Part shown: piece by piece, positions 24,860-46,729 of the stretch | Layout: each line of letters opens with the position of its first letter | How positions within the stretch are numbered: the stretch's first letter is position 1 | Virus record (IMG/VR): IMGVR_UViG_3300028862_000012 | Span: 1 to 64,000 of that record | Reading direction: 5' to 3' (one strand) | DNA length: 64,000 nt | Notes under the pieces: generated by a model | The model's database searches: none | Told to the model about the DNA's origin: nothing | Seen by the model: the letters and a program-made list of their open reading frames with translations, nothing else | Position numbers and translations under genes: made by a program

Positions 24860-27247
24860 TTATAATTCTTTTACATCTTTATATGTTTCTCCAGAAGCTA
24901 AATAGTCGCAATTAACCCAGCTAAGAGTTGCCTTAGTATCATCAATTTCTATTTGATCATTATGTGTAAAAGCATATTTAACTTTTTCAAAATATAAACC
25001 GTTTGATCTAACATCAAGCGCAATTCTATTACTTAACTTAGCATAATCTAATTCTTTATATTTTAAAGTTTCTTGCCATTTATTAGGTGCATTTGTTTTA
25101 TCATATGTATTAGGCAAAGGCGTAGTACTCCCACCAAAATAAGGATCTGCACCATGCCGTGTTTCATATGTTCGAGATACATAAACAATTTCATTAATAT
25201 CAAATTTCATTTTACGTTGCATATCTACTACATTTCGCATACCAGTATTAGAACGAGTAACATAAGGAAAATTACCCATAAACTGATCTAGTGCTAAACC
25301 TTGAGCACCTTCAAAAATTGCATATTCAAACTCTGGTATTTCAATAATAATGTGATTAAGCATAAAAGTTAAATCATCATAAAATGTTACTTGAAATTCT
25401 TCATTTTTAAATAAGTCATGCGCCCATTCTGGCATTACTTCTTTTAATTGATTATACCAATAGCGATTTATTTCATTAAACTTTTTATCAAATCTTGAAT
25501 CAAAGTTTTGAGAAATAATATAATTTATAGTTTCTTCTCTTTCAATAGTTTCACCAATTCCATAACCACAACTTCCATGTCTTGCTTTTCCACGTAGCTC
25601 TTCTTTAATTTGATTAGCAATCATATCCCATACTGTTGTAATTACGCAATTTGGATTAACATAAATTTTATAATTATCAGGAATTTTTAATTCCTTAAAC
25701 TCTTTTTTAAAAGCAGTAGGATTTAAAATAAAATGTTCTGATAGATATGTGGGAACGTTTGCAAAATAACCAGAACCAATATGAGAAAATACATGACGCT
25801 GACCTTCAGGAGTTACTACCGTATTATGAGAAATTGCACCATTAGCTATATAACTATGGGTACTATCCACTGTCAGATCATAAACATCTTCGATATCAAA
25901 TCCAAGTTCTATGTTTTCAATATCTACAATAAAATATTTTTCACACACTGAAATAATATTTGAAAACTTATTAGAAATAGTATTTTTATTATTCATAATA
26001 AATCCTGTTGTTATTTTATCTGTTTGCTTTCCTTTATTTGAAGACCCCTTAACTTCTTTTAGAATATTTCTTTTATTTGATAGTCCTATAATTAAGTCTT
26101 GACCTGAATTATTTTCATTATATACTTTTCTTTTCTCATTTAGTAAATAATCAAGTCTGTCTCTATGATAAAACGCCTCAAACCCTACTATCTCTTTAAA
26201 CCTCTCTAAGTTAGATAAAGAGCAAATTGTTAACTCATTTTGAGAAATATCAGAATGTATACCAAGAAGGTAAAGTAGCTGTTGGGTTTCTTTAATAAGA
26301 AAATGACTATTATTAAAGAATTTTATTCTTCCATAAATATTTTTACCTTTTGAATAATAAGTTATTCCTCCATCTGTATCAAACAATCCTCTTATATATC
26401 TTGCTATAATTGTTTTAGTACCCTCCATAACAAAATCTGGAGTTCTTTTTTCAGTAAGCTTTTTTAAATAGCATCCATAGGCAGTTAATACATTTAAAAA
26501 GTCTGTTGAATTTATAGTAATGGTTTTGCATTTTACTGATCTTCTATGTTGTTTAATAGTATAACTTAATCCAATTTCAATAGCAAACTGCTCTAACCAA
26601 TCAAGCACATCTTGTTTTATTTCAACATTAACTACTATTACAATTACTTTTTTTACATAATATCCATCCCCATTACATATTCCTATAAACTGTGCTAATT
26701 TTTCAATATTTATTTTTGTTAAATCAACTTTTACTTTATTATGAACAAAATCAGTCAGACTACTAACTTTTTTAATCTTATATTCTTTATTACCAGAATA
26801 AAAATTATATTCTTTTGGAAAGATAAATTGATGAATGTCTTTATTTAAATCAATCGAGCTAACCCATTCTTTATTAGAAGTTAATCCATTCCAAACATAA
26901 TATTTATGTGCATCAGTACATTTAAGTTCTACTCCATTTTTAAGACTTATTTTATTAACTTTTTTATTTTCTTCTTTATATAAAAGTGAAGTATTCTCAA
27001 TTTCTGTATTCATATTTAAAATAGATATACTTTTATTATTTGTTTCATTCCCTACTATATTCCCTAAATACTTTAATCCTGTGTTTGTATAAATAATAGT
27101 ATCTTTTGTCTGACAATGCCCTGCTTGACAACCGCCGTTGAATCTAACCACCATATCAGCATTATGTTTTCTGCAAAGGTAATCAGTCATGAGTCCTTTA
27201 CCTTCATCACCGTAATTGGCCCCTATGCAAATACTAGCCTTTTTCAT
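24860..27247 (-). CDS. purA: adenylosuccinate synthetase-like protein containing an intein
   Basis: [20 protein letters not shown]|[42 protein letters not shown]; likely start MKKASIC. Confidence 0.85.
25823..27115 (-). mobile_element. intein (431 aa) with LAGLIDADG homing endonuclease
   Basis: Starts CQTKDT after GH and ends [21 protein letters not shown] before T; FIGICNGDG and [10 protein letters not shown] motifs. Confidence 0.9.
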
Positions 27248-27330
27248 ATTCAACCTCATCATCTATATATTAATTTAAGCATATTATCAAATTAAAAGGC
27301 AAAGTATTTTTGTACTACTTTGCCTTTGTA

Positions 27331-28548: not shown

Positions 28549-28682
28549 CTTTTACTTCAACTGGTTCTACAGTAGCTTCACTTTTTTCAGTGACTACTTC
28601 TTTCTCAATAATTTCTTCTGCTGGCATTCCCATATTGTCTCCTTTTATTTAATGAAGAATAGAGTCTTCAGCTCTTTATTTA

Positions 28683-28753
28683 CTCGGACGGAAGAACTCG
28701 AATCCTCATGGACGGGATCAAAACCCGTAATCCTACCATTAGATGACATCCGA
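28683..28753 (-). tRNA. tRNA-Gln(UUG)
   Basis: Acceptor TCGGATG/CGTCCGA, anticodon arm ACGGG TTTTGAT CCCGT, T loop TTCGAGT; no encoded CCA. Confidence 0.85.
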
Positions 28754-28794
28754 AAGTACTTAATAAGTTTACTATACTAATTCTTTTGTGTCAA

Positions 28795-29550
28795 TTACTT
28801 AATACTTATAATGCAATAAACAGGAAAATGATCTGATACCGTTTTTCTGGTATTCCAATCTTGTGTCCAGTAGTCTACATCTGACTTTATTATTTTATTC
28901 ACTAATTCTTTTGAGACAAACATATGGTCATAACTATTAGAAGCACTTTTCATTCCTAATGTTGATTTATTTACACCGCTTACATTAGTACTGTACTTTG
29001 TAATATCAAAGTTCTTTACATTTTCTAAATTAAAATCACCACTAATGATAGTATTGTTTTCTTTATTAAAATAAGTATATAACTCATCCAAATTATTTAC
29101 TTCTGCAATTCTATCTTTTTCAGAGCTACCATAAATAATATGTACTATAACTAAATTTACTGAAAAATCAGAATTTAAATCTTTAATAGTAACACCATAA
29201 GGATTACGAACAAAACCAGTAGTAGGATATAAACCTATTTCTGTAACTGTCACTTTTTTAGTATTATAAAATACTCCAAAGTATTCTTTATATTTGTCTG
29301 TTCCTACAGAAGTTTTACTTATCACATATTTATAATCAGGAAGATATTGTAATGTTTGTTTCATTCCATTTTCATTCATTACCTCTATTGCACCACATAC
29401 ATCAAATGTACTAATTACAGAAGCTAATGTTTTATAATCTTTTGTTCCATCACCTAATCGTAACATATTATAACTTGCAATTGATAAACTCTGTGCTATA
29501 AGTAAAGCACTAACTAAACAAAATGCAATAATCGAAATAAATTTTTTCAT
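28795..29550 (-). CDS. secreted DNase I-like (EEP family) nuclease
   Basis: Signal peptide; SYNM, IEV, EYFG, SGDFN, YDHMF, SDHFPV motifs. Confidence 0.82.
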   Translation of the reverse strand: MKKFISIIAFCLVSALLIAQSLSIASYNMLRLGDGTKDYKTLASVISTFDVCGAIEVMNENGMKQTLQYLPDYKYVISKTSVGTDKYKEYFGVFYNTKKVTVTEIGLYPTTGFVRNPYGVTIKDLNSDFSVNLVIVHIIYGSSEKDRIAEVNNLDELYTYFNKENNTIISGDFNLENVKNFDITKYSTNVSGVNKSTLGMKSASNSYDHMFVSKELVNKIIKSDVDYWTQDWNTRKTVSDHFPVYCIISIK

Positions 29551-29582
29551 AATTAAATCCTTTATAGTCTAATAGTTAAAAA

Positions 29583-29668
29583 CGGAGCAAACAAGACTCG
29601 AACTTGTGATACCATTTCTGGTATGATAGGTTAGCAACCTATTGCAGTAGCCTCTGTGCCATTGCTCC
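29583..29668 (-). tRNA. tRNA-Ser(GCU)
   Basis: GGAGCAA/TTGCTCC, ATAGG TTGCTAA CCTAT, long variable arm. Confidence 0.88.
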
Positions 29669-29802
29669 AATGACTGTTCTCAGTCAGCGAGAATGCTTTT
29701 TTAACGACTCAAACATACGATTACGACTTGCATTATACACTTATTGCATTCTAAGTGCAAGTGCAACTGCTACGTGTTCAGACAAGCTTGAACGCCTCGC
29801 TT

Positions 29803-29890
29803 CAGAGTTAGAAAGATTCGGACTTTCGCTACCTTTTCGAGGTAGTACAGTTTTCAAGACTGTTACCTTCAACCACTCGGTCATAACTCC
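29803..29890 (-). tRNA. tRNA-Ser(UGA)
   Basis: GGAGTTA/TAACTCT, ACAGT CTTGAAA ACTGT, long variable arm; T loop TCCGAAT. Confidence 0.85.
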
Positions 29891-29898
29891 AAATAATA

Positions 29899-30084
29899 TT
29901 ATACTTCTTCTGGAATAAAATTTATAGTAATATTTACTAATTGTCCATCTTTTTGTTCAGTCCATAAAACTGAGTCTACACAACAAAGATTAATTCCCAT
30001 ATTATTAGGAATTACCTCTAAAGGAAAAGGACACTTATTCAAGTCCTCTTTAGAGTTTGATACTTTTAAAAATTCTGTTTTCAT
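29899..30084 (-). CDS. hypothetical protein
   Basis: SD AAGGAG. Confidence 0.5.
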   Translation of the reverse strand: MKTEFLKVSNSKEDLNKCPFPLEVIPNNMGINLCCVDSVLWTEQKDGQLVNITINFIPEEV

Positions 30085-30147
30085 ACAATTTGCTCCTTAT
30101 ATATTCTTTTACCTAAATAAATAGTTGCTTATCTTTTTAATAAGCAA

Positions 30148-30360
30148 TTAATCCTTGTACTGAAAATTTCTGTAATTTTTCCAGCTACGATAGTCTCCTA
30201 CTTTAGAAGCATATACACGATTATATTGCTTTGCACATTTTCTATGAGAATAATTACTTTTCCTTGAAAGAAAATCATCATCCCATTCTCCAGAACATAA
30301 AGCTATAATTTTATATTCTCTATAGCTATAGCTATCTTTACACTTAATAATTTTACCCAT
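30148..30360 (-). CDS. hypothetical basic protein
   Basis: SD AGGT; RSWKNYRNFQYK C-terminus. Confidence 0.45.
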   Translation of the reverse strand: MGKIIKCKDSYSYREYKIIALCSGEWDDDFLSRKSNYSHRKCAKQYNRVYASKVGDYRSWKNYRNFQYKD

Positions 30361-30619
30361 AGATAAGTTTACCTCACCTAATGTTCCATATAATCTCCTT
30401 AGTTAACTTTATTACTAAATCTACTCACTTGTGTTATCAATAACAGTTAGTCACTATAAATAGTTATAAAGTAATGACACGTTAATACGAATAGATTTAA
30501 TAATAAAAGTAAGATGAAATAGTTTAGGTGACTATTGTGGCACATCTTACTCACCAATAGATAACCTATTGGATTTTAAAGATCCTGATATGTAATCATC
30601 GGTAAATGATTACTATTCT

Positions 30620-30693
30620 TAGGACTAATTGGGCTTGAACCAATGACTTATTGCTTAGAAGGCAATTGCTCTATCCATCTGAGCTATAATCCC
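30620..30693 (-). tRNA. tRNA-Arg(UCU)
   Basis: GGGATTA/TAGTCCT, ATTGC CTTCTAA GCAAT. Confidence 0.9.
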
Positions 30694-30718
30694 AAACCTG
30701 TTATAAAAGTAAGATTAC

Positions 30719-30886
30719 TTAACTATGCTCTGCTCTTTCATGCCCACAGGTAGTGCATCGATCATTCCAACTACTACCACCATAATACTGATGACAGTTA
30801 CACTTCAAACAATAACCTGCACTATAGGCAAAGCCAATACCTGCAAGCAAAACCAAAGCCAATGTGACCAAAATAAACTTCTTCAT
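30719..30886 (-). CDS. secreted Cys/His-rich microprotein (55 aa, not in the ORF track)
   Basis: MKKFILVTLALVLLAGIGFA-YSAGYCLKCNCHQYYGGSSWNDRCTTCGHERAEHS; SD AAGGAG. Confidence 0.7.
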   Translation of the reverse strand: MKKFILVTLALVLLAGIGFAYSAGYCLKCNCHQYYGGSSWNDRCTTCGHERAEHS

Positions 30887-30895
30887 ATAGACTCC

Positions 30896-31081
30896 TTAAT
30901 CTAAGTTTCTTATAAAATGTTTTCTATAACCTTCTGCAAGTACTTCTTTTAATTTTCTTTCATTTTCCTCAATAGCATTAAAATAATATTCTTTCATTTT
31001 ATCTTTCAGTTCTGTAGTAAAATGATTAGTAATACCTTTTCTAATGTTATCTAATAACTTTTGTAATAAGTTTTCATTCAT
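30896..31081 (-). CDS. hypothetical protein
   Basis: SD AAGGA. Confidence 0.45.
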   Translation of the reverse strand: MNENLLQKLLDNIRKGITNHFTTELKDKMKEYYFNAIEENERKLKEVLAEGYRKHFIRNLD

Positions 31082-31094
31082 GTATGTTCCTTAA

Positions 31095-31167
31095 AGCGGT
31101 ATGTCGGAATCGAACCGATGACAATTAACTTGGAGGGCTAATGTTCTACCAACTGAACTAATACCGC
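31095..31167 (-). tRNA. tRNA-Gly(UCC), C33 variant
   Basis: GCGGTAT/ATACCGC, TTAGC CCTCCAA GTTAA. Confidence 0.85.
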
Positions 31168-31181
31168 ACACTTTATAATAG

Positions 31182-31622
31182 TTAATTATTTAAAACTTTC
31201 TTCTCAAGCCACTCGATATACTGACTTGTAGATGCTTCAAAAAATACTCCAAAGGTATTATAAAATTCATCGTGTAGTTGTTCTACTGTTTTCTTTATAA
31301 AGAAGTCATTAAACTCATCTGTACCCATTACATAAACTTCTACTTTTCCATCTTTGTAATAACCTGATTTAAACCAAGTCAAAGTAGGTTTTCTATTACT
31401 ATCCCAAAAAGAAGGAATGGCTACAGATTTATTAAACTCTTCATATGGTTTAAAATCAAGATATAAACAATATACATCCTCAGTAGGATCATTTATTTTT
31501 ATATTTATAATGTCACATTTCATAGGTGAATCTGCTTCCTCGCCTATCTGTGCAAGCTTGTCTGTTATCTGCAATCCCTTAATAGGAAAGTTATTTGATT
31601 TAGCCATGTCTTTAATCAGCAT
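31182..31622 (-). CDS. hypothetical protein
   Basis: SD AAGGAG. Confidence 0.55.
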   Translation of the reverse strand: MLIKDMAKSNNFPIKGLQITDKLAQIGEEADSPMKCDIINIKINDPTEDVYCLYLDFKPYEEFNKSVAIPSFWDSNRKPTLTWFKSGYYKDGKVEVYVMGTDEFNDFFIKKTVEQLHDEFYNTFGVFFEASTSQYIEWLEKKVLNN

Positions 31623-31634
31623 ATTTGCTCCTTA

Positions 31635-31856
31635 TTAAAAATAAACCTTTACTAAATCTTTAGTTATTATTCCCCAGTCTGGCTCTGTATCAATAATCAT
31701 TTCAATAAAAATAAAAGGATACTTTTTTGGTTTTCCGAATACTTTATATAATTCTGTATCACTAGAAGTAAGCCAATCTTTTACATGTTTTTTTGCTACA
31801 AACTTTTTATAGTCTTCAATGGAATTAATCAATGTTCCATTAATTTCCTTGTCCAT
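31635..31856 (-). CDS. hypothetical protein
   Basis: packed ORF. Confidence 0.5.
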   Translation of the reverse strand: MDKEINGTLINSIEDYKKFVAKKHVKDWLTSSDTELYKVFGKPKKYPFIFIEMIIDTEPDWGIITKDLVKVYF

Positions 31857-31859
31857 TAC

Positions 31860-32174
31860 TTATTCCTTATCCAGAACAGTACAAGTTTCAAACCAGTTAA
31901 ATAGTTCTATCATAATTTCTTTAGGAACACAAGCTGTATTCCATTCTTTTGTTACTTTATTCATTTTTTCACATTTATAATAATTAGTAACCATATACTC
32001 ACCATCAGAATGAAGATTAGGACAGTCTTTACACCTGTTTATTTTTACTATGCGCTTAAATTCTGATACAGGAATTTCTGATAAAGAATATCCCAGCATA
32101 GATTCATATGATTCAATATATTCCTCATTTGACATATTTCTAATATCTTTGCATATTTCATCACACTTACTCAT
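31860..32174 (-). CDS. hypothetical Cys-containing protein
   Basis: CKDCP...YKC. Confidence 0.5.
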   Translation of the reverse strand: MSKCDEICKDIRNMSNEEYIESYESMLGYSLSEIPVSEFKRIVKINRCKDCPNLHSDGEYMVTNYYKCEKMNKVTKEWNTACVPKEIMIELFNWFETCTVLDKE

Positions 32175-32506
32175 TTTGTATCCTGATATTTAATCATGAC
32201 TTGAGTGTAATAAAAAGTTTCATAACTATAACTAAGACAAATTACAGATATTCCACCAAGAGGAACCCAACCAATTTTAATCAAGTTTTTTACCTGAATT
32301 TCAAGATCAGAAATGTTTCGGTCTTGCAAAATATTATAGTCAATAATAATTTGTTCTGCTTTAATATTTACATTATCTTGCACCTTAGAAAGAGTATTTA
32401 CCTTAGAAGATGCATTTACATATTTTTGTTTTGTTTCACTTGATGTTTCTGCAAAAGTAAGCGATAGAGTGCAAGCAAGCAGAATAAGTGTAATAATCTT
32501 TTTCAT
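32171..32506 (-). CDS. secreted protein with DUF1737-like domain
   Basis: Signal peptide; LEIQVKNLIKIGWVPLGGISV...YTQVMIK. Confidence 0.55.
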   Translation of the reverse strand: MKKIITLILLACTLSLTFAETSSETKQKYVNASSKVNTLSKVQDNVNIKAEQIIIDYNILQDRNISDLEIQVKNLIKIGWVPLGGISVICLSYSYETFYYTQVMIKYQDTK

Positions 32507-32721
32507 ATTCCTTCTCCCATATTATTTTCGATAATAAACTGTTTCTTTTTAGCGTCTACTAAAACTGATATTTCTTTTACTGACTTTTTTATATAATCAT
32601 AGCAACGATAGGCATCACTATTTAAGCAACCCTCTAAGACTTCACAGTCTTCCTTAGAGTTTAGCTCAATTATAATTTTGTTGTTTTCCAATACAACTGT
32701 TATTGGTTTTTTGTCTGACAT
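32503..32721 (-). CDS. hypothetical protein
   Basis: SD AGGAG. Confidence 0.5.
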   Translation of the reverse strand: MSDKKPITVVLENNKIIIELNSKEDCEVLEGCLNSDAYRCYDYIKKSVKEISVLVDAKKKQFIIENNMGEGI

Positions 32722-33001
32722 ATTATTCTCCTAAATTAATATTTTCTTTAAGATCAACAGGCTCCCACAAATACCATCCAGTAAGAATAACTGGAACAAG
32801 CAATGTTTCACTACACAGAATGCTCCATACTATATTTCCTGCACTTACCCGATAGTAAACCTTTGGATTCATTTCATCTATATTAGCCAGCAACAGGTTT
32901 CTTTAATCCTGTGAAACCTTTTATATCTCTGGCAAAGGTACAAAAGTAAAGCCATACTAAATACATTTACTAAACTTGATAAGTGTTTAGTAAAAACTTT
33001 A

Positions 33002-33075
33002 TGGGCCTAGTTGGACTTGAACCAACGACCGACGGATTATGAGTCCGCAGCTCTAACCAACTGAGCTATAGGCCC
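33002..33075 (-). tRNA. tRNA with CAU anticodon (Ile2 or elongator Met; not initiator)
   Basis: GGGCCTA/TAGGCCC, GCGGA CTCATAA TCCGT; G1-C72 pair. Confidence 0.88.
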
Positions 33076-33205
33076 AAAAAACAAGTGTATAATATGCAAA
33101 GAAGTATGCTTGCCCATAATCTTTCTATGGATAAAATTTTTTCTTTGCATTAAAGATGTTATACAAGCATCTTAGTTCAGCAATACAACGTACTACTAAA
33201 TCTAT

Positions 33206-33286
33206 TGGACAGAGGAGGATTTGAACCTCCGAAGCCGAAGCAACGGTTTTACAGACCGCCGGTTTTAACCCCTTACCTATCTATCC
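33206..33286 (-). tRNA. tRNA-Tyr(GUA)
   Basis: GGATAGA/TCTGTCC, GCGGT CTGTAAA ACCGT, long variable arm. Confidence 0.88.
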
Positions 33287-33292
33287 ATAAAA

Positions 33293-33363
33293 AGTGCAGA
33301 GCAGGATTTGAACCTGCGATTATTAGTTTTGCAGATACTCTTTGACCGCTTGAGTGTCCACTC
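33293..33363 (-). pseudogene. degenerate tRNA-Cys(GCA)
   Basis: T arm GCAGG TTCAAAT CCTGC intact and CTGCAAA loop present, but the anticodon and acceptor stems do not pair. Confidence 0.55.
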
Positions 33364-33369
33364 AACAGA

Positions 33370-33639
33370 TTAGAAATCAAAACTACAACTACCTGAATAA
33401 TAATGAGATTTTCCATCAGAAGTGGTATAAAACAGATCATCGTTATCAACACCTACATAATCAATATGTCCATTACCGATTATTTCATCACCTGAAAGTT
33501 TATGCTTGATAATTGTTCCATCTTTTCCAGTTATAGAACGATACTGTGCTTGATTAGCATTTTTCTTTGCATCTGCAACCACACTACAGCTTGTGAATAA
33601 AAAAACAGTCAAGCAAACCAAAATAATAAGCTTCTTCAT
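33370..33639 (-). CDS. putative lipoprotein
   Basis: MKKLIILVCLTVFLFTSC lipobox; SD AGGAG. Confidence 0.65.
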   Translation of the reverse strand: MKKLIILVCLTVFLFTSCSVVADAKKNANQAQYRSITGKDGTIIKHKLSGDEIIGNGHIDYVGVDNDDLFYTTSDGKSHYYSGSCSFDF

Positions 33640-33654
33640 GTTACACTCCTAAAT

Positions 33655-33727
33655 CGGGGACAAGAGGGCTTGAACCTCTGACCTACAGGTTAACGGCCTG
33701 TTGCTCTACCGACTGAGCTATGTCCTC
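33655..33727 (-). tRNA. tRNA-Asn(GUU), C33 variant
   Basis: ACAGG CCGTTAA CCTGT; D arm GCTC/GAGC; one acceptor mismatch (A2-C71). Confidence 0.8.
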
Positions 33728-33731
33728 AAAA

Positions 33732-33928
33732 AAACTAATCTTGCTTTGTCATAACAACGGGTGGGAGATACTGTTATAACTAACAAGATTAGTTTATTGA
33801 TAGCTTTAATGTATCAAGGAGATATGCTGAAATCACCAAAAACAGCACACACTAAAGCTATCAATAAAAAAGTCAACAGAAAAACGGACAAGGATTAGGA
33901 AGTAAACCTATAATTAAACTGTTGACTT
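33732..33928 (-). ncRNA. array of three long hairpins between tRNAs
   Basis: Perfect stems 33732-43/33784-95 (12 bp), 33793-808/33853-68 (16 bp), 33870-79/33919-28 (10 bp). Confidence 0.5.
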
Positions 33929-33930
33929 AT

Positions 33931-34001
33931 AGGCGAGTACTGGAATCGAACCAATATTTAGAGATTAATTCATCTCTTGTCCTGCCCTAGACGAACTCGC
34001 C
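33931..34001 (-). tRNA. tRNA-like gene with an 8-nt anticodon loop, identity undetermined
   Basis: GGCGAGT/ACTCGCC, D arm GTCTAGGGCAGGAC, AGAGA TGAATTAA TCTCT, T loop TTCGATT. Confidence 0.7.
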
Positions 34002-34187
34002 AAACAAAGTTTTTAATACTTTAAGTGAAATCATTTTTCCACTTCTTTATTCGCTATATGCTTTTATTACAAGCACTAAAAACTTACAGAATAATTTAAG
34101 AAAAGTTTATCTGCATTACTTTCCCGAGATAGTTTATGTAACTATCAAAATAAAAACAACACTTATTCATTTTACAAGTTGTTGTTC

Positions 34188-34269
34188 TGCGAGATAAAAG
34201 TCTCGAACTTTCACGCCTTACGGCATATGCTCCTAGGGCACACGTGTCTACCAATTTCACCAATCTCGC
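34188..34269 (-). tRNA. tRNA-Leu(UAG), C33 variant
   Basis: GCGAGAT/ATCTCGC, TGTGC CCTAGGA GCATA, long variable arm. Confidence 0.85.
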
Positions 34270-34283
34270 GCAAAAGGTTTTAT

Positions 34284-34659
34284 TGCCAGAAAACGGACTT
34301 GAACCGTCACGCCCATTACAGGCAAGGGATTTTCTTACTGCTATAGTTTTCACTACCAAAAGTTGCTTTGCATCTTTTGTTTGAAGTCTGGACTGTATCA
34401 TTCCCTGTTTTATTACAGGGATCATCCGTCAGTCTCTACAATCATTAATTATTTCTAATTAACTTCATCACGGTATTTTCATGTCCATTTCTGGATTTAG
34501 AATCTCTTAGTAGCTGATTTGATTTCATGTATCACTACAATAAATCTTATTTGCTATTACCGTTTATTTCGGATAATTCTACACTAGAGTTTTACGTATA
34601 TCTCTATGCACTCAAATTTTTTTTAAGTCCCTCGTGTCTGCCAATTTCACCATTCTGGC
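34284..34659 (-). tRNA. trnL: tRNA-Leu(UAA) split by a group I intron (exon 1 34659-34625, exon 2 34333-34284)
   Basis: Spliced anticodon arm AGGGA CT|TAA|AA TCCCT with the junction after U34; acceptor GCCAGAA/TTCTGGC. Confidence 0.88.
34334..34624 (-). ncRNA. group I self-splicing intron (291 nt, no ORF, IC3-like)
   Basis: P1 ACTT/GAGT with U.G at the splice site; P3 ATCCG/CGGAT; P7 GACTG/CAGTC; P8 TCCCTG/CAGGGA; terminal G. Confidence 0.88.
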
Positions 34660-35009
34660 AATAAAACTTCTTACTACTCTCCCTCCCTAAACTGTCAAAA
34701 AACCTATGCTTTCGAGTTACTTGTTGTTTCTCTCTTGCATGTTTTTATATTACTACTGTTACTAGATTTTGTCAATAACTTTTTTAAAAATAAATACAAA
34801 TAATTTTTATTATAATTTAATTTTTATAGATATTATTATATAGATATAATAATAGTTACTAAAAGTTGAAAAGATTCATGGAAAAATCTTTTCGTTTGGC
34901 TGTAACCAAACTTACTTTTAGTAACTTAATATGTCTCGAAAACTATGCACTTTATGTGACAGTACCTTTATAGTACAATTATGTTTCTTTGTACTATATC
35001 AGTACTATT

Positions 35010-45124: not shown

Positions 45125-46729
45125 TTAGGCTACTCTATTTAATAAAGGTAATACATTGTTATCAAGATATTCTTCTATATATTTTAGTTGTGAATATGGA
45201 ATCCTTAGTAACTGTATATTATTACTTATACAATAGTTTGTTTTAATTAAATCACGATTTTTCATTTCAGTATATAATTTTAGGATTTCACTATCTGTAA
45301 GATGTCGGTTTCTCATAAAATCAGAAAATTCTTCTAAACTGTTGTGTTGATTACCATCACATTCTATGCAAATATTAAAGTCTGGTAAATAAAAATCAAA
45401 AGGTAAAGTATTTTTAGATCGACAATTAGGAAATCTTTTCTGACTTTTATAATTTATATTATTATTTTTCAAATAATATTCTGTTTGTTTTTCTAAATTT
45501 GAAGAGCTACATTTTGGACAACCTTGAAAATGAATATGATTATTAGGTTGCATTAAAAATTCTCCATGCTCTTTGCAGACTATTATTACAGGTATATGCA
45601 TACCTGTGTACTCCACTTTGGAATAATCATATAGATCATGATGAATGTTCTTAAATCGCTTTATAACCTCTTCTTTATTAAGTCTTATATTAATATGAGA
45701 CTGCTCAACTCCACAAATAGGGCATCCTTCTCCTTGTAAATGAGCAGAAGCTTTCTTTAAAAAGATACCATGAACTTTGCACACTATTTTAACTTTATCT
45801 GAAAGAGTGCTAAAGTTCACTTGAGAATAATCATATTTATCTCCATGAATTTCTTTTGCTTTTTCTAAAAAATATTTTTTATTTTTTCTTCTATTATATC
45901 CTGTTTCAATATAAGAACATAAGCTACATCCTTTTGATTTCATATGATTAAAAGGCGTTTGCTCAAATATTCCATGAATAGGGCAAATAATTTTAACTGG
46001 AGTGTGGCAATTTTTATAGTCTACCAAACTATAATCATACTTATTATTATGAACTTGTTTTGCTTTTGGAATAAAAGTATCTTTTGAGTCATAAGTATAA
46101 ATATAAGTATAGTCTTCATATTTTGAGATCATACTACATTTCTGACACTCATGTCCAGCTAAATGAGAGTTTGCAGATTGAGTAAACTTTCCATGAATAG
46201 GACATATAATAATTACTTTTTCACTAAGTTTAGAAAAAGAAACTAGGCTGTAATCATATTTATTACTATAAATTTTATTTGCTCTCATAATAAACTCTTC
46301 TAAAGATATTCTTTTTAAGTCTGAATTTAATTTCTGAGCACATTTAAAGCAGTTCATTCCTAATAAATGATTTGCAGGTGACTGTTCAAACTCACCATGA
46401 ATCGGACAAATAATTTTAACTTTAATATTATTTTTTATATATTCTACTTTTGAATAGTCATATTTTTCACTATGAACTAATTTTGCTTTCTCAATAAACT
46501 CTTCAGTTGAACTTCTACATTTTAACCCTCTGAAAGAACATCCACATTTTTCACATCCATGACCTTGTAAGTGAGTATTTGCAATCTGCTCAAATTTTCC
46601 ATGCTTTTTACATATAATGATGATTTTACTACTACTATTAGTATAGATAGATTCTGAATAATCATACTTATTGTTATGAACTTTATTTGCGCGTTTAATA
46701 AATTCTTCTTGAGTTAATTTTTTTGACAT
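45125..46729 (-). CDS. homing endonuclease-like protein with six DUF723-like Zn repeats and a Vsr-like nuclease domain
   Basis: 6x (I/V)C..HG.F...H..G..C..C; LPFDFYLP..NICIECDG.QH. Confidence 0.82.
   Translation of the reverse strand: MSKKLTQEEFIKRANKVHNNKYDYSESIYTNSSSKIIIICKKHGKFEQIANTHLQGHGCEKCGCSFRGLKCRSSTEEFIEKAKLVHSEKYDYSKVEYIKNNIKVKIICPIHGEFEQSPANHLLGMNCFKCAQKLNSDLKRISLEEFIMRANKIYSNKYDYSLVSFSKLSEKVIIICPIHGKFTQSANSHLAGHECQKCSMISKYEDYTYIYTYDSKDTFIPKAKQVHNNKYDYSLVDYKNCHTPVKIICPIHGIFEQTPFNHMKSKGCSLCSYIETGYNRRKNKKYFLEKAKEIHGDKYDYSQVNFSTLSDKVKIVCKVHGIFLKKASAHLQGEGCPICGVEQSHINIRLNKEEVIKRFKNIHHDLYDYSKVEYTGMHIPVIIVCKEHGEFLMQPNNHIHFQGCPKCSSSNLEKQTEYYLKNNNINYKSQKRFPNCRSKNTLPFDFYLPDFNICIECDGNQHNSLEEFSDFMRNRHLTDSEILKLYTEMKNRDLIKTNYCISNNIQLLRIPYSQLKYIEEYLDNNVLPLLNRVA

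What the first reader, a model, noticed from the sequence alone, without database searches (positions are those of the whole stretch)
34284..34659. Group I intron in a phage-encoded tRNA-Leu(UAA)
Seen: a 291-nt ORF-less intron with P1 U.G, P3, P7, P8 and terminal G, inserted after U34 of the anticodon. Known: this is the insertion site of the cyanobacterial/plastid trnL(UAA) intron, whereas described phage group I introns are mostly in protein genes. Inference: phage may shuttle tRNA introns between phyla, and the unspliced precursor hides the anticodon. The UUA Leu codon it reads is very common in this AT-rich genome.
Basis: partly seen in the sequence, partly recalled or inferred. Interest (0 to 1): 0.62.

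Follow-up and report, generated by a model that had tools for sequence, protein, structure and literature searches.

The report
Self-splicing intron inside a phage tRNA gene
A 224-kb phage from peat carries its only tRNA for the common leucine codon UUA as a gene split by a 291-base group I (self-splicing) intron, and the same arrangement is present but unannotated in many other phage genomes, although a 2014 review said phage introns sit only in protein genes.

Summary
On the minus strand, ARAGORN in intron mode calls a tRNA-Leu(UAA) at 34284-34659, split after U34 by a 291-nt ORF-less insert (34334-34624).

The insert is a group I intron of the bacterial tRNA type (IC3-like):
- P1 has a U.G pair at the 5' splice site, and the intron ends in G.
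- Helices P2-P9 are all canonical, and P7 has a bulged A beside a G-C pair.
- Thirty-eight of 39 highly conserved 3'-domain columns are kept.

Rfam RF00028 misses it. Two covariance models built only from relatives hit it, and nothing else in the genome (36 bits, E 2e-8; 51 bits, E 2.5e-15). The shortest of those relatives do reach Rfam's cut-off.

The contig is a phage (tail sheath, tail fibre, CheckV 91%). This is its only tRNA-Leu(UAA), and UUA makes up 51% of its Leu codons.

The intron is a divergent, AT-rich member of a family found at the same site in many bacterial phyla. It also occurs in T7-like marine phages, Agrobacterium phage Atu_ph07 and a 735-kb phage. Some relatives carry an HNH endonuclease.

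Splicing itself is untested, because no RNA data exist. This is a new member of a known kind in an under-reported host context.

The parts
34284..34659 (-). Whole split tRNA-Leu(UAA) gene (85-nt tRNA plus 291-nt intron). It is the only tRNA-Leu(UAA) in the 224-kb phage genome and has no encoded CCA.
   Evidence: ARAGORN with introns allowed; sequence
34625..34659 (-). Exon 1: acceptor 5' strand, D arm, 5' anticodon stem and loop up to U34 (...GAGGGACUU)
   Evidence: A 32-nt stretch is identical to intron-less tRNA-Leu(UAA) genes L010-L012, which read GGGACTTAAAATCCCTT without a break.
34334..34624 (-). Group I intron, 291 nt, 31% GC, no ORF of its own
34284..34333 (-). Exon 2: AAAAUCCCUU..., i.e. 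A35 A36 of the anticodon, 3' anticodon stem, long variable arm, T arm, acceptor 3' strand and discriminator A
34610..34616 (-). Internal guide. Intron 12-15 (GAGU) pairs with exon ACUU to form P1, with U(-1).G12. Intron 9-11 (UUU) can pair with the first AAA of exon 2 to form P10.
   Evidence: Read from the sequence. The TTTGAGTGC motif is shared with relatives.
34581..34609 (-). P2 hairpin (intron 16-44): 8 pairs with bulged G41 and a 12-nt loop, where relatives have a GAAA tetraloop
   Evidence: The family's P2 covaries.
34570..34576 (-). P3 5' strand UUAUCCG (intron 49-55). It follows the conserved GUAGAA and precedes J3/4 AAAUAA (34564-34569).
34558..34563 (-). P4 5' strand ACGGUA (intron 62-67)
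   Evidence: The family U-A pair is A-U here, changed on both sides.
34476..34556 (-). P5 (UAGC/GCUA) with an insertion of about 80 nt that relatives lack, including a UCCA-GAAA-UGGA hairpin. This insertion is why automatic alignments lose the 5' half.
34470..34475 (-). P4 3' strand UACCGU (intron 150-155), inside the conserved AAUACCG motif
34440..34469 (-). P6 (A157-U184, U158-A183, where the family has CC/GG) and the P6a hairpin (intron 162-181) with a GAAA loop
   Evidence: Read
34422..34440 (-). J6/7 and the P7 5' strand (UGUAGAGACUG, with bulged A190 and the presumed G-binding pair G191-C234), then GAC and the P3 3' strand GGAUGA
34402..34421 (-). P8 hairpin UCCCUGU-AAUAAA-ACAGGGA (intron 204-223)
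34390..34401 (-). J8/7 (AUGAUA) and the P7 3' strand CAGUCC (intron 224-235)
34334..34389 (-). AGAC, P9 (ACU-C/G-AGU, with one U x C mismatch), P9a hairpin, P9b hairpin GUAGU-GAAA-ACUAU, then AAG ending in the terminal G at 34334
34188..34269 (-). Neighbouring tRNA-Leu(UAG), 14 nt downstream and probably co-transcribed. It is part of the 11-tRNA cluster at 28682-34659.
34747..34775 (-). Promoter-like site TTGACA-17-TAATAT, about 90 nt upstream of the tRNA. It is suggestive only, because such sites are not enriched here.

Best explanation
This is a genuine group I intron of the bacterial tRNA (IC3-like, Azoarcus/trnL) type. It interrupts the anticodon loop of the phage's only tRNA-Leu(UAA) gene between U34 and A35.

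Shown:
- the split cloverleaf
- the full set of core helices
- homology to other tRNA-Leu(UAA) introns
- the phage setting

Inferred mechanism:
1. The minus-strand tRNA cluster is transcribed.
2. The intron folds, and its guide GAGU pairs with exon ACUU to form P1 with a U.G pair at the cleavage site.
3. A free guanosine bound at the G191-C234 pair of P7 attacks after U34.
4. The terminal G291 then takes the same site, while UUU (intron 9-11) holds the first AAA of exon 2 (P10).
5. The exons are joined to give the loop CUUAAAA with anticodon UAA.
6. Host RNase P, 3' trimming and CCA addition finish the tRNA.

The tRNA then reads UUA, and probably UUG, the phage's most used leucine codon.

The intron itself is most likely a domesticated or stranded selfish element. 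It has no endonuclease gene, is AT-rich like the phage and has no close relatives.
For: Gene structure:
- ARAGORN finds the split tRNA, and it is the only tRNA-Leu(UAA) in the genome.
- Intron-less tRNA-Leu(UAA) genes share the identical 32-nt D and anticodon arm and read straight across the proposed junction.

Homology:
- Model R1, built from 17 viral introns, hits at 36.4 bits, E 1.9e-8.
- Model R2, built from 8 viral and 29 bacterial tRNA-Leu introns, hits at 50.8 bits, E 2.5e-15. It is the only hit in the 224-kb genome.
- Six of those relatives reach Rfam RF00028's gathering score over the full model.
- The family structure is backed by covariation: 93.7% of cells paired, 34 pairs changed on both sides, 0 of 500 shuffles as good.

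Structure in this copy:
- All listed P2-P9 pairs are canonical; P9 has one skipped U x C mismatch.
- P3 has a different sequence from every relative but stays complementary, in the same register after the conserved GAC.
- P4, P6, P7 and P9 each differ from the family by changes on both sides of a pair.
- 38 of 39 columns that are at least 90% conserved in 94 relatives are kept.

Setting:
- Phage genes and CheckV 91%.
- UUA is 51% of Leu codons.
- A second assembly of the run gives the same DNA with no intron-less variant.
Against: - No RNA data exist for this phage, so splicing is not shown.
- Rfam RF00028 gives nothing, even at E<=10.
- Both of my models misalign the 5' half because of the roughly 80-nt P5 insertion. 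A sequence-only HMM of the 5' domain is not significant (E 9.5). P2-P4 therefore rest on manual mapping plus a restricted search.
- Departures from invariant family positions:
  - L2 is a 12-nt loop instead of GAAA.
  - J4/5 reads AU instead of AA.
  - J8/7 has A to U, or a 1-nt insertion.
  - P9 has one U x C mismatch.
  Any of these could weaken folding or catalysis.
- It has the lowest R2 score of all complete introns collected.
Confidence: 0.8

Rival explanations
1. The intron is a decayed, splicing-dead relic, so the phage's tRNA-Leu(UAA) is a pseudogene and UUA is read by host tRNA only.
For: - It is the lowest-scoring and most divergent member and is missed by Rfam.
- The L2 GNRA loop is lost, J4/5 and J8/7 depart from invariant positions, and P9 has a mismatch.
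- It has no endonuclease to keep it mobile.
Against: - Every listed core pair is intact, and several differ from relatives by paired changes. That is what selection for structure produces and what drift in a 31%-GC genome would destroy.
- 38 of 39 conserved 3'-domain positions are kept.
- Both exons still give a clean cloverleaf with a perfect 7-bp acceptor stem.
Confidence: 0.1
2. The intron is real but does not splice on its own. It needs a phage or host protein (a chaperone or maturase-like factor) to fold, because the AT-rich helices and the missing L2 tetraloop weaken the fold.
For: - The model structure is about 18 kcal/mol weaker than a competing minimum-energy fold that pairs the J2/3 region with the P5 insertion.
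- The L2 tetraloop is absent.
- Protein-assisted group I splicing is well known, for example CYT-18 and CYT-19 (review PMC3984707).
Against: - No candidate factor was identified.
- Three GAAA-capped hairpins (P5 insertion, P6a, P9b) could supply replacement tertiary contacts.
- According to the literature cited, small bacterial tRNA introns of this type self-splice in vitro.
Confidence: 0.07
3. The stretch is not phage DNA. It is host chromosome or an assembly chimera, so this is an ordinary bacterial tRNA intron.
For: - The same intron type at the same site is common in bacteria.
- IMG/VR contigs can include host flanks, and some of my pattern hits were tRNA halves next to integrase-like genes.
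Against: - It is one 223,865-bp contig with even GC of about 26-36%.
- It encodes tail sheath, tail fibre, a terminase-like protein, NrdD, SbcCD, ligase and homing endonucleases, and CheckV gives 91%.
- The intron lies inside an 11-tRNA cluster flanked by phage-type genes.
- Intron GC matches the contig.
- An independent Logan contig of 31.5 kb spans it with no differences.
Confidence: 0.03

Closest known systems
Bacterial tRNA-Leu(UAA) group I introns ('Leu.3Ug' of Williams 2020; classical Anabaena/Nostoc and plastid trnL intron)
   Same: - Same host gene and same site, CUU/intron/AAAA, with U(-1) and a terminal G.
- Same TTGAGTGC guide and P2 start, the same GUAGAGACU...GAC...AGUCCAGAC core and the same GAAA-capped P9b.
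- Recognised by a model built from them.
   Different: - It is encoded by a phage.
- 31% GC, against about 36-71% in the others collected.
- An insertion of about 80 nt in P5, and a longer P6a and P9a.
- No L2 GAAA loop.
- Below Rfam's threshold.
- Kinship to the cyanobacterial or plastid branch in particular was not tested, because no cyanobacterial sequence was fetched.
[quoted passage not shown]
   Same: It works the same way: a small bacterial tRNA intron with P2-P9 and a GAAA-capped L9. From my memory of its sequence it has the same AAAUUCGG, CCGAGCCAAG and GUGUAGAGACUAGACGG motifs. That comparison rests on recall and was not run here.
   Different: - Different tRNA and a different position in the anticodon loop.
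- Azoarcus is about 205 nt, GC-rich and has an L2 tetraloop.
Split tRNA-Leu(UAA) genes in other phages: Agrobacterium phage Atu_ph07 (NC_042013), 735-kb phage LR756501, T7-like marine contigs (e.g. L070) and jumbo-size contigs L056, L079 and L080
   Same: - The same gene is split at the same site by the same intron family.
- L079 and L080 also have large peripheral insertions and an AT-rich sequence.
   Different: - They score 57-191 bits with R2, against 51 here.
- At most about 72% identical even in the conserved 3' domain.
- L053 and L056 carry an antisense HNH endonuclease ORF.
- The tRNA is not annotated in the Atu_ph07 record, and LR756501 has no annotation at all.
Classical phage group I introns (T4 td, nrdB, nrdD; SPO1 and Bastille DNA polymerase; Twort)
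   Same: They are self-splicing group I ribozymes carried by large lytic phages that are rich in homing endonucleases and inteins. This phage also has an intein in a PurA-like gene and HNH ORFs.
   Different: Those introns interrupt protein-coding genes and often carry an endonuclease ORF (PMC3984707). This one interrupts a tRNA and has no ORF.

Membership tests
Group I intron (catalytic RNA) | P1 helix between the 5' exon end and an internal guide, with a U.G wobble at the 5' splice site | tested here: met
   Exon ACUU pairs with intron GAGU (12-15), giving U(-1).G12. The same TTGAG guide is in all relatives.
Group I intron (catalytic RNA) | Terminal G (omega G) just before the 3' splice site | tested here: met
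   G291 (34334) is followed by AAAAUCCC of exon 2. Relatives end ...GGUA(A/C/U)G.
Group I intron (catalytic RNA) | Core fold P3-P8, P4-P6 and P7, with the P3/P7 pseudoknot and a G-binding G-C pair in P7 next to a bulged A | tested here: met
   All pairs are canonical in the manual model. The helices sit in the same order and register as in a family whose structure covaries. The 5' half rests on manual mapping.
Group I intron (catalytic RNA) | Conserved core sequence (J3/4 AAA, J6/7-P7 'R' element, J8/7-P7 'S' element) | tested here: met
   38 of 39 columns that are at least 90% conserved in 94 relatives are identical. J3/4 AAA is present.
Group I intron (catalytic RNA) | Reaches the gathering score of Rfam RF00028 (Intron_gpI) | tested here: not met
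   No hit at the gathering score, and none at E<=10 on 901 nt or on the whole genome. Six short relatives reach 51-56 bits against a cut-off of 50. Williams 2020 notes that none of the Rfam seed sequences was bacterial.
Group I intron (catalytic RNA) | Guanosine-dependent self-splicing | not testable with these tools
   There is no RNA run for this DNA. A bench assay is needed.
tRNA-Leu(UAA) anticodon-loop intron (Leu.3Ug / trnL type, IC3) | Inserted between U34 and A35 of the loop CUU/AAAA of tRNA-Leu(UAA) | tested here: met
   ARAGORN gives 'gactt-Intron-aaaat'. The site is the same as in 35 bacterial loci and as described for Nostoc.
tRNA-Leu(UAA) anticodon-loop intron (Leu.3Ug / trnL type, IC3) | Homology to other tRNA-Leu(UAA) introns | tested here: met
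   R2 gives 50.8 bits, E 2.5e-15, and is unique in the genome.
tRNA-Leu(UAA) anticodon-loop intron (Leu.3Ug / trnL type, IC3) | GNRA tetraloops on L2 and L9 (nearly invariant in the 37-sequence alignment) | tested here: inconclusive
   The L9b GAAA loop is kept. L2 is a 12-nt loop, AUAUACGUAAAA. Extra GAAA loops in the P5 insertion and P6a may compensate, but that is an inference.
tRNA-Leu(UAA) anticodon-loop intron (Leu.3Ug / trnL type, IC3) | Specific descent from the cyanobacterial/plastid branch | not tested
   No cyanobacterial sequence was fetched. A 104-column tree of the 3' domain is unresolved (support 0.29-0.9).
Mobile group I intron with homing endonuclease | Intron-encoded endonuclease ORF | tested here: not met
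   No ORF lies within the intron. The HNH protein of relatives L053 and L056 has no tblastn match in this genome.
Phage-encoded tRNA | The gene lies in a viral genome, within a phage tRNA cluster | tested here: met
   IMG/VR record with CheckV 91%; tail sheath, tail fibre and other phage genes; an 11-tRNA cluster.

The most novel reading that the evidence does not exclude
Group I introns in phage tRNA genes are a widespread, overlooked class and not a one-off.
- The tRNA-Leu(UAA) intron occurs in phages from 40-kb T7-like marine podophages to 490-kb and 735-kb jumbo phages, where it goes unannotated.
- Versions carrying one HNH endonuclease family are shared between phage contigs and bacteria of several phyla.

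Phages would then be vectors that spread this classical 'cyanobacterial' intron across phyla. The statement that phage introns are confined to protein genes would need revising. A bolder extension is that the split anticodon loop delays or gates tRNA maturation, or shelters a precursor pool from host anticodon nucleases.
Probability: 0.45. Interest if true: 0.7.

Novelty: new member of a known kind. Interest (0 to 1): 0.58.

Why it matters
- **Contradicts a published generalisation.** Hausner et al. [quoted passage not shown] Here a phage's only tRNA for its commonest leucine codon depends on a ribozyme. The same arrangement shows up in a cultured jumbo phage (Atu_ph07), which offers a direct experimental system.
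- **Exposes an annotation blind spot.** Default tRNA finders skip split genes, and Rfam's group I model misses AT-rich or insertion-bearing copies. Phage tRNA repertoires and intron counts are therefore under-estimated.
- **Bears on intron spread.** HNH-bearing relatives in both phages and bacteria make the question of how the trnL intron spread across phyla testable.
- **Possible practical use.** The very short (191-196 nt) phage versions may interest people who use the Anabaena intron for RNA circularisation.

Tried and rejected
- **Rfam RF00028**, at the gathering score and at E<=10, on the window, on 901 nt and on the whole genome: no hit.
- **Searches for close relatives:**
  - blastn of the locus against 50,697 phage records matched only tRNA exon pieces.
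  - An exact core pattern found nothing in IMG/VR.
  - A looser core pattern gave 7 hits: five in protein-coding sequence and two (L006, L009) that look like unrelated intron cores. None was kin of this intron.
  - The DnaJ-like neighbouring protein found no related loci.
  - A specific pattern in the metagenome collection found only the source contig, Ga0302296_1000003. That used the single metagenome scan.
- **RNA evidence:** only one DNA run, from peat and probably the source, holds the stretch. No RNA run does. Laying that run showed one contig, no variant and no joint.
- **Alignment:** MAFFT on full-length introns misaligned the 5' third of this intron. Both covariance models also misplace the 5' half. 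Sequence-only HMMs gave the 3' domain E 7.5e-4, the 5' domain no significant hit and the middle nothing.
- **Phylogeny:** a FastTree of 104 core columns puts it next to tRNA-Met-type introns with weak support. I treat the placement as unresolved.
- **Pattern hits dropped:** six of the 80 IMG/VR loci were not introns but tRNA halves at integration sites or chance matches.
- **Promoters:** promoter-like sites are not enriched (8 found against 5.4 +/- 2.7 expected).
- **Relatives of a virus record** cannot be drawn by the genome search.
- **Joined exons:**, I did not build or search the joined (spliced) tRNA. The exons were analysed in place, through ARAGORN's intron mode, and by reference.

Full report
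**1. What is there**

On the minus strand, 34659..34284 reads as a type-II tRNA with a 291-nt insert in the anticodon loop.
- ARAGORN in its default mode finds 10 tRNAs in the window and skips this one.
- With introns allowed it calls tRNA-Leu(taa) at c[34283,34660], with a 291-nt intron and the junction 'gactt-Intron-aaaat'.
- The gene is exon 1 at 34659..34625, the intron at 34624..34334 and exon 2 at 34333..34284.
- The exons give a 7-bp acceptor stem GCCAGAA/UUCUGGC, the anticodon stem AGGGA/UCCCU and the loop CUU|AAAA. No CCA is encoded.
- Three intron-less tRNA-Leu(UAA) genes in other records share an identical 32-nt D and anticodon arm. They read GGGACTTAAAATCCCTT straight across the proposed junction.
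- They were handled in place and by reference.

**2. Is the insert a group I intron?**

Rfam says no. RF00028 gives nothing at its gathering score, nothing at E<=10 on a 901-nt slice and nothing on the whole genome. The case therefore rests on relatives and on anatomy.

Relatives:
- A pattern made of the tRNA-Leu D arm, CTTAA and TTGAG found more than 119 IMG/VR contigs.
- Of the first 80 loci, 24 are tRNA-Leu(UAA) genes split at the same place by inserts of 191-809 nt.
- Six short ones that I tested reach RF00028's cut-off over the whole model, at 51-56 bits.
- Their structure covaries. In 17 sequences, 99% of cells are paired and 24 pairs change on both sides.
- A model built from them (R1) hits the window only at 34334-34484(-), with 36.4 bits and E 1.9e-8.
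- A broader model (R2) was built from 8 viral and 29 bacterial tRNA-Leu(UAA) introns. In that alignment 93.7% of cells are paired, 34 pairs change on both sides, and 0 of 500 shuffles do as well.
- R2 gives 50.8 bits and E 2.5e-15. It is the only hit in the 224-kb genome.

Anatomy. All listed pairs are canonical.

| Element | Intron positions / sequence |
|---|---|
| P1 | exon ACUU with GAGU (12-15), U.G at the splice site |
| P10 | UUU (9-11) with the first AAA of exon 2 |
| P2 | 16-44 |
| P3 | UUAUCCG / CGGAUGA |
| J3/4 | AAAUAA |
| P4 | ACGGUA / UACCGU |
| P5 | UAGC / GCUA, plus an insertion of about 80 nt |
| P6 | AU / AU |
| P6a | GAAA-capped hairpin |
| P7 | G189-C235, bulged A190, G191-C234 to G195-C230 |
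| P8 | UCCCUGU / ACAGGGA |
| P9 | ACU-C / G-AGU, with P9a and a GAAA-capped P9b |
| 3' end | AAG, ending in G291 |

Evidence that the structure has been kept by selection:
- P3 has a sequence unlike any relative's, yet it stays complementary in the same register after the conserved GAC.
- P4 (U-A to A-U), P6 (CC/GG to AU/AU), P7 (A-U to G-C) and P9 (C-G to U-A) differ from the family on both sides of the pair.
- In the 3' domain, 38 of 39 columns that are at least 90% conserved in 94 relatives are identical here.

**3. Weak points**

- Both models misalign the 5' half, because the P5 insertion is costly for them.
- A sequence-only HMM of the 5' domain is not significant.
- A restricted search does reproduce my mapping of the guide, P2, GUAGAA and the P3 5' strand.
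- Four features depart from the family and could weaken the ribozyme:
  - L2 is a 12-nt loop where relatives have GAAA.
  - J4/5 reads AU, not AA.
  - J8/7 has one change, or a 1-nt insertion.
  - P9 has a U x C mismatch.
- The thermodynamic optimum is a competing fold, at -60.9 against about -42 kcal/mol for the nested model.
- It is the lowest-scoring complete member collected.

**4. Is it a phage?**

- The window is the first 64 kb of an IMG/VR record of 223,865 bp with CheckV completeness of 91%. The same contig appears as peat metagenome contig Ga0302296_1000003.
- It encodes tail sheath, tail fibre, a terminase-like protein, NrdD, SbcCD, an NAD-dependent ligase, primase and several homing endonucleases.
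- GC is an even 26-36%.
- All 11 tRNAs lie at 28.7-34.7 kb, and this is the only tRNA-Leu(UAA).
- UUA is 51.4% of Leu codons and 4.1% of all codons.
- A second assembly of the run spans the region on a 31.5-kb contig, with no differences and no intron-less form.

**5. Context elsewhere**

- A core motif found at least 120 bacterial species, and the scan stopped at its limit.
- In the 80 loci returned, 35 are tRNA-Leu(UAA) genes split at the same site. They come from Alpha- and Gammaproteobacteria, Acidobacteriota and Bacteroidota. Other loci have the same intron type in Met, Arg, Phe, Ser, His and Thr tRNAs. This agrees with Williams 2020, who mapped 5,292 bacterial tRNA introns. The site is therefore not peculiar to cyanobacteria.
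- Among phages:
  - L070 is plainly a T7-like genome, with RNA polymerase, primase-helicase, DNA polymerase, portal and scaffold genes. The split tRNA lies between the polymerase and exonuclease genes.
  - L056, L079 and L080 lie on contigs of 157-174 kb.
  - Agrobacterium phage Atu_ph07 (490 kb, cultured) has a 278-nt intron in tRNA-Leu(UAA), scoring 175 bits with R2. The record lists no tRNA there, only hypothetical-protein CDSs.
  - The 735-kb phage LR756501 has a 205-nt intron scoring 191 bits. That record carries no annotation at all.
- L053 and L056 carry an antisense HNH endonuclease ORF in the P6a loop (phrog_10822, E about 1e-45; the two proteins are 52% identical). The same protein family sits in long bacterial tRNA-Leu introns.
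- This phage has no copy of that endonuclease.
- Its intron is at most about 72% identical to any relative, even in the conserved domain.
- A core tree is unresolved.

**6. Literature**

- Hausner, Hafez and Edgell 2014 state that all phage introns then known lie in protein-coding genes despite the many phage tRNA genes (PMC3984707).
- Nine full-text searches found no paper that describes a group I intron in a phage tRNA. That includes jumbo-phage and recoded-phage studies.
- The library is incomplete, so earlier mention elsewhere cannot be excluded.

**7. Verdict**

[quoted passage not shown] It probably still splices, because its structure has been kept by compensating changes. That is inference, not data.
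- The "shuttle between phyla" idea is plausible for the family as a whole. This copy does not show it, and looks like a long-term resident.
- The wider pattern, split tRNA-Leu genes across very different phages, is the more interesting result and can be tested in Atu_ph07.

Noticed in passing
window 33931-34001 (-): A tRNA-like gene with a good cloverleaf but an 8-nt anticodon loop. ARAGORN calls it 'tRNA-?(Ile|Asn)' with a four-base anticodon, aatt. It could be a quadruplet-decoding or frameshift-suppressor-like tRNA, or a decayed tRNA.
   Followed up: partly
window 24860-27262 (-): An 800-aa adenylosuccinate-synthetase-like gene (PF00709; PHROG 'PurZ-like' family 1211). It is interrupted by an intein with a LAGLIDADG endonuclease at about residues 57-480 (PF14890, PF14528). 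This is a second self-splicing element in the same phage. Whether the enzyme is PurA-like or a PurZ, which would make 2-aminoadenine DNA, was not examined.
   Followed up: partly
window 45125-46729 (-); also G000 94013-96214 (+), outside the window: Free-standing HNH or homing-endonuclease-like ORFs (phrog_559, E 9e-102; phrog_12131, E 2e-34). The genome is rich in selfish nucleases.
   Followed up: no
L053:507-965 (-) and L056:3514-3975 (+); bacterial loci L183, L184, L200, L222: Relatives of the intron carry an antisense 152-153-aa HNH endonuclease ORF in the P6a loop. The same protein family lies in or beside bacterial tRNA-Leu(UAA) introns from Acidobacteriota, Bacteroidota and Gammaproteobacteria, and the L183 copy is frameshifted. 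It is a candidate homing endonuclease for tRNA-Leu genes.
   Followed up: partly
L263 (NC_042013.1, about 112,890-113,251) and L264 (LR756501.1, about 190,243-190,533): Agrobacterium phage Atu_ph07 and a 735-kb uncultured phage each hold an intron-split tRNA-Leu(UAA). It is not annotated as a tRNA in the Atu_ph07 record, where a 117-nt 'hypothetical protein' CDS overlaps it. The LR756501 record has no annotation.
   Followed up: yes
L014, L020, L024, L027, L031, L035, L037, L038, L045, L047, L059, L068, L070, L073, L082, L087 (IMG/VR marine contigs): These tRNA-Leu(UAA) introns are only 191-196 nt long yet match Rfam's group I model over its full length. At least one (L070) sits in a T7-like phage genome. 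From memory, the Azoarcus intron is about 205 nt, so these would be among the shortest natural group I introns.
   Followed up: partly
MH598807.1 (Pelagibacter phage HTVC120P), 19652-19807: The intron core of the marine family matches inside the annotated capsid gene at 70% identity. This suggests a related group I intron in a pelagiphage capsid gene.
   Followed up: no
window 34498-34504 with 34575-34581 (-); intron 44-50 with 121-127: The minimum-energy fold pairs the conserved J2/3 segment UAGAAUU with GAUUCUA in the P5 insertion (7 bp). This competes with P3. It may be a folding trap, a regulatory alternative or chance.
   Followed up: no
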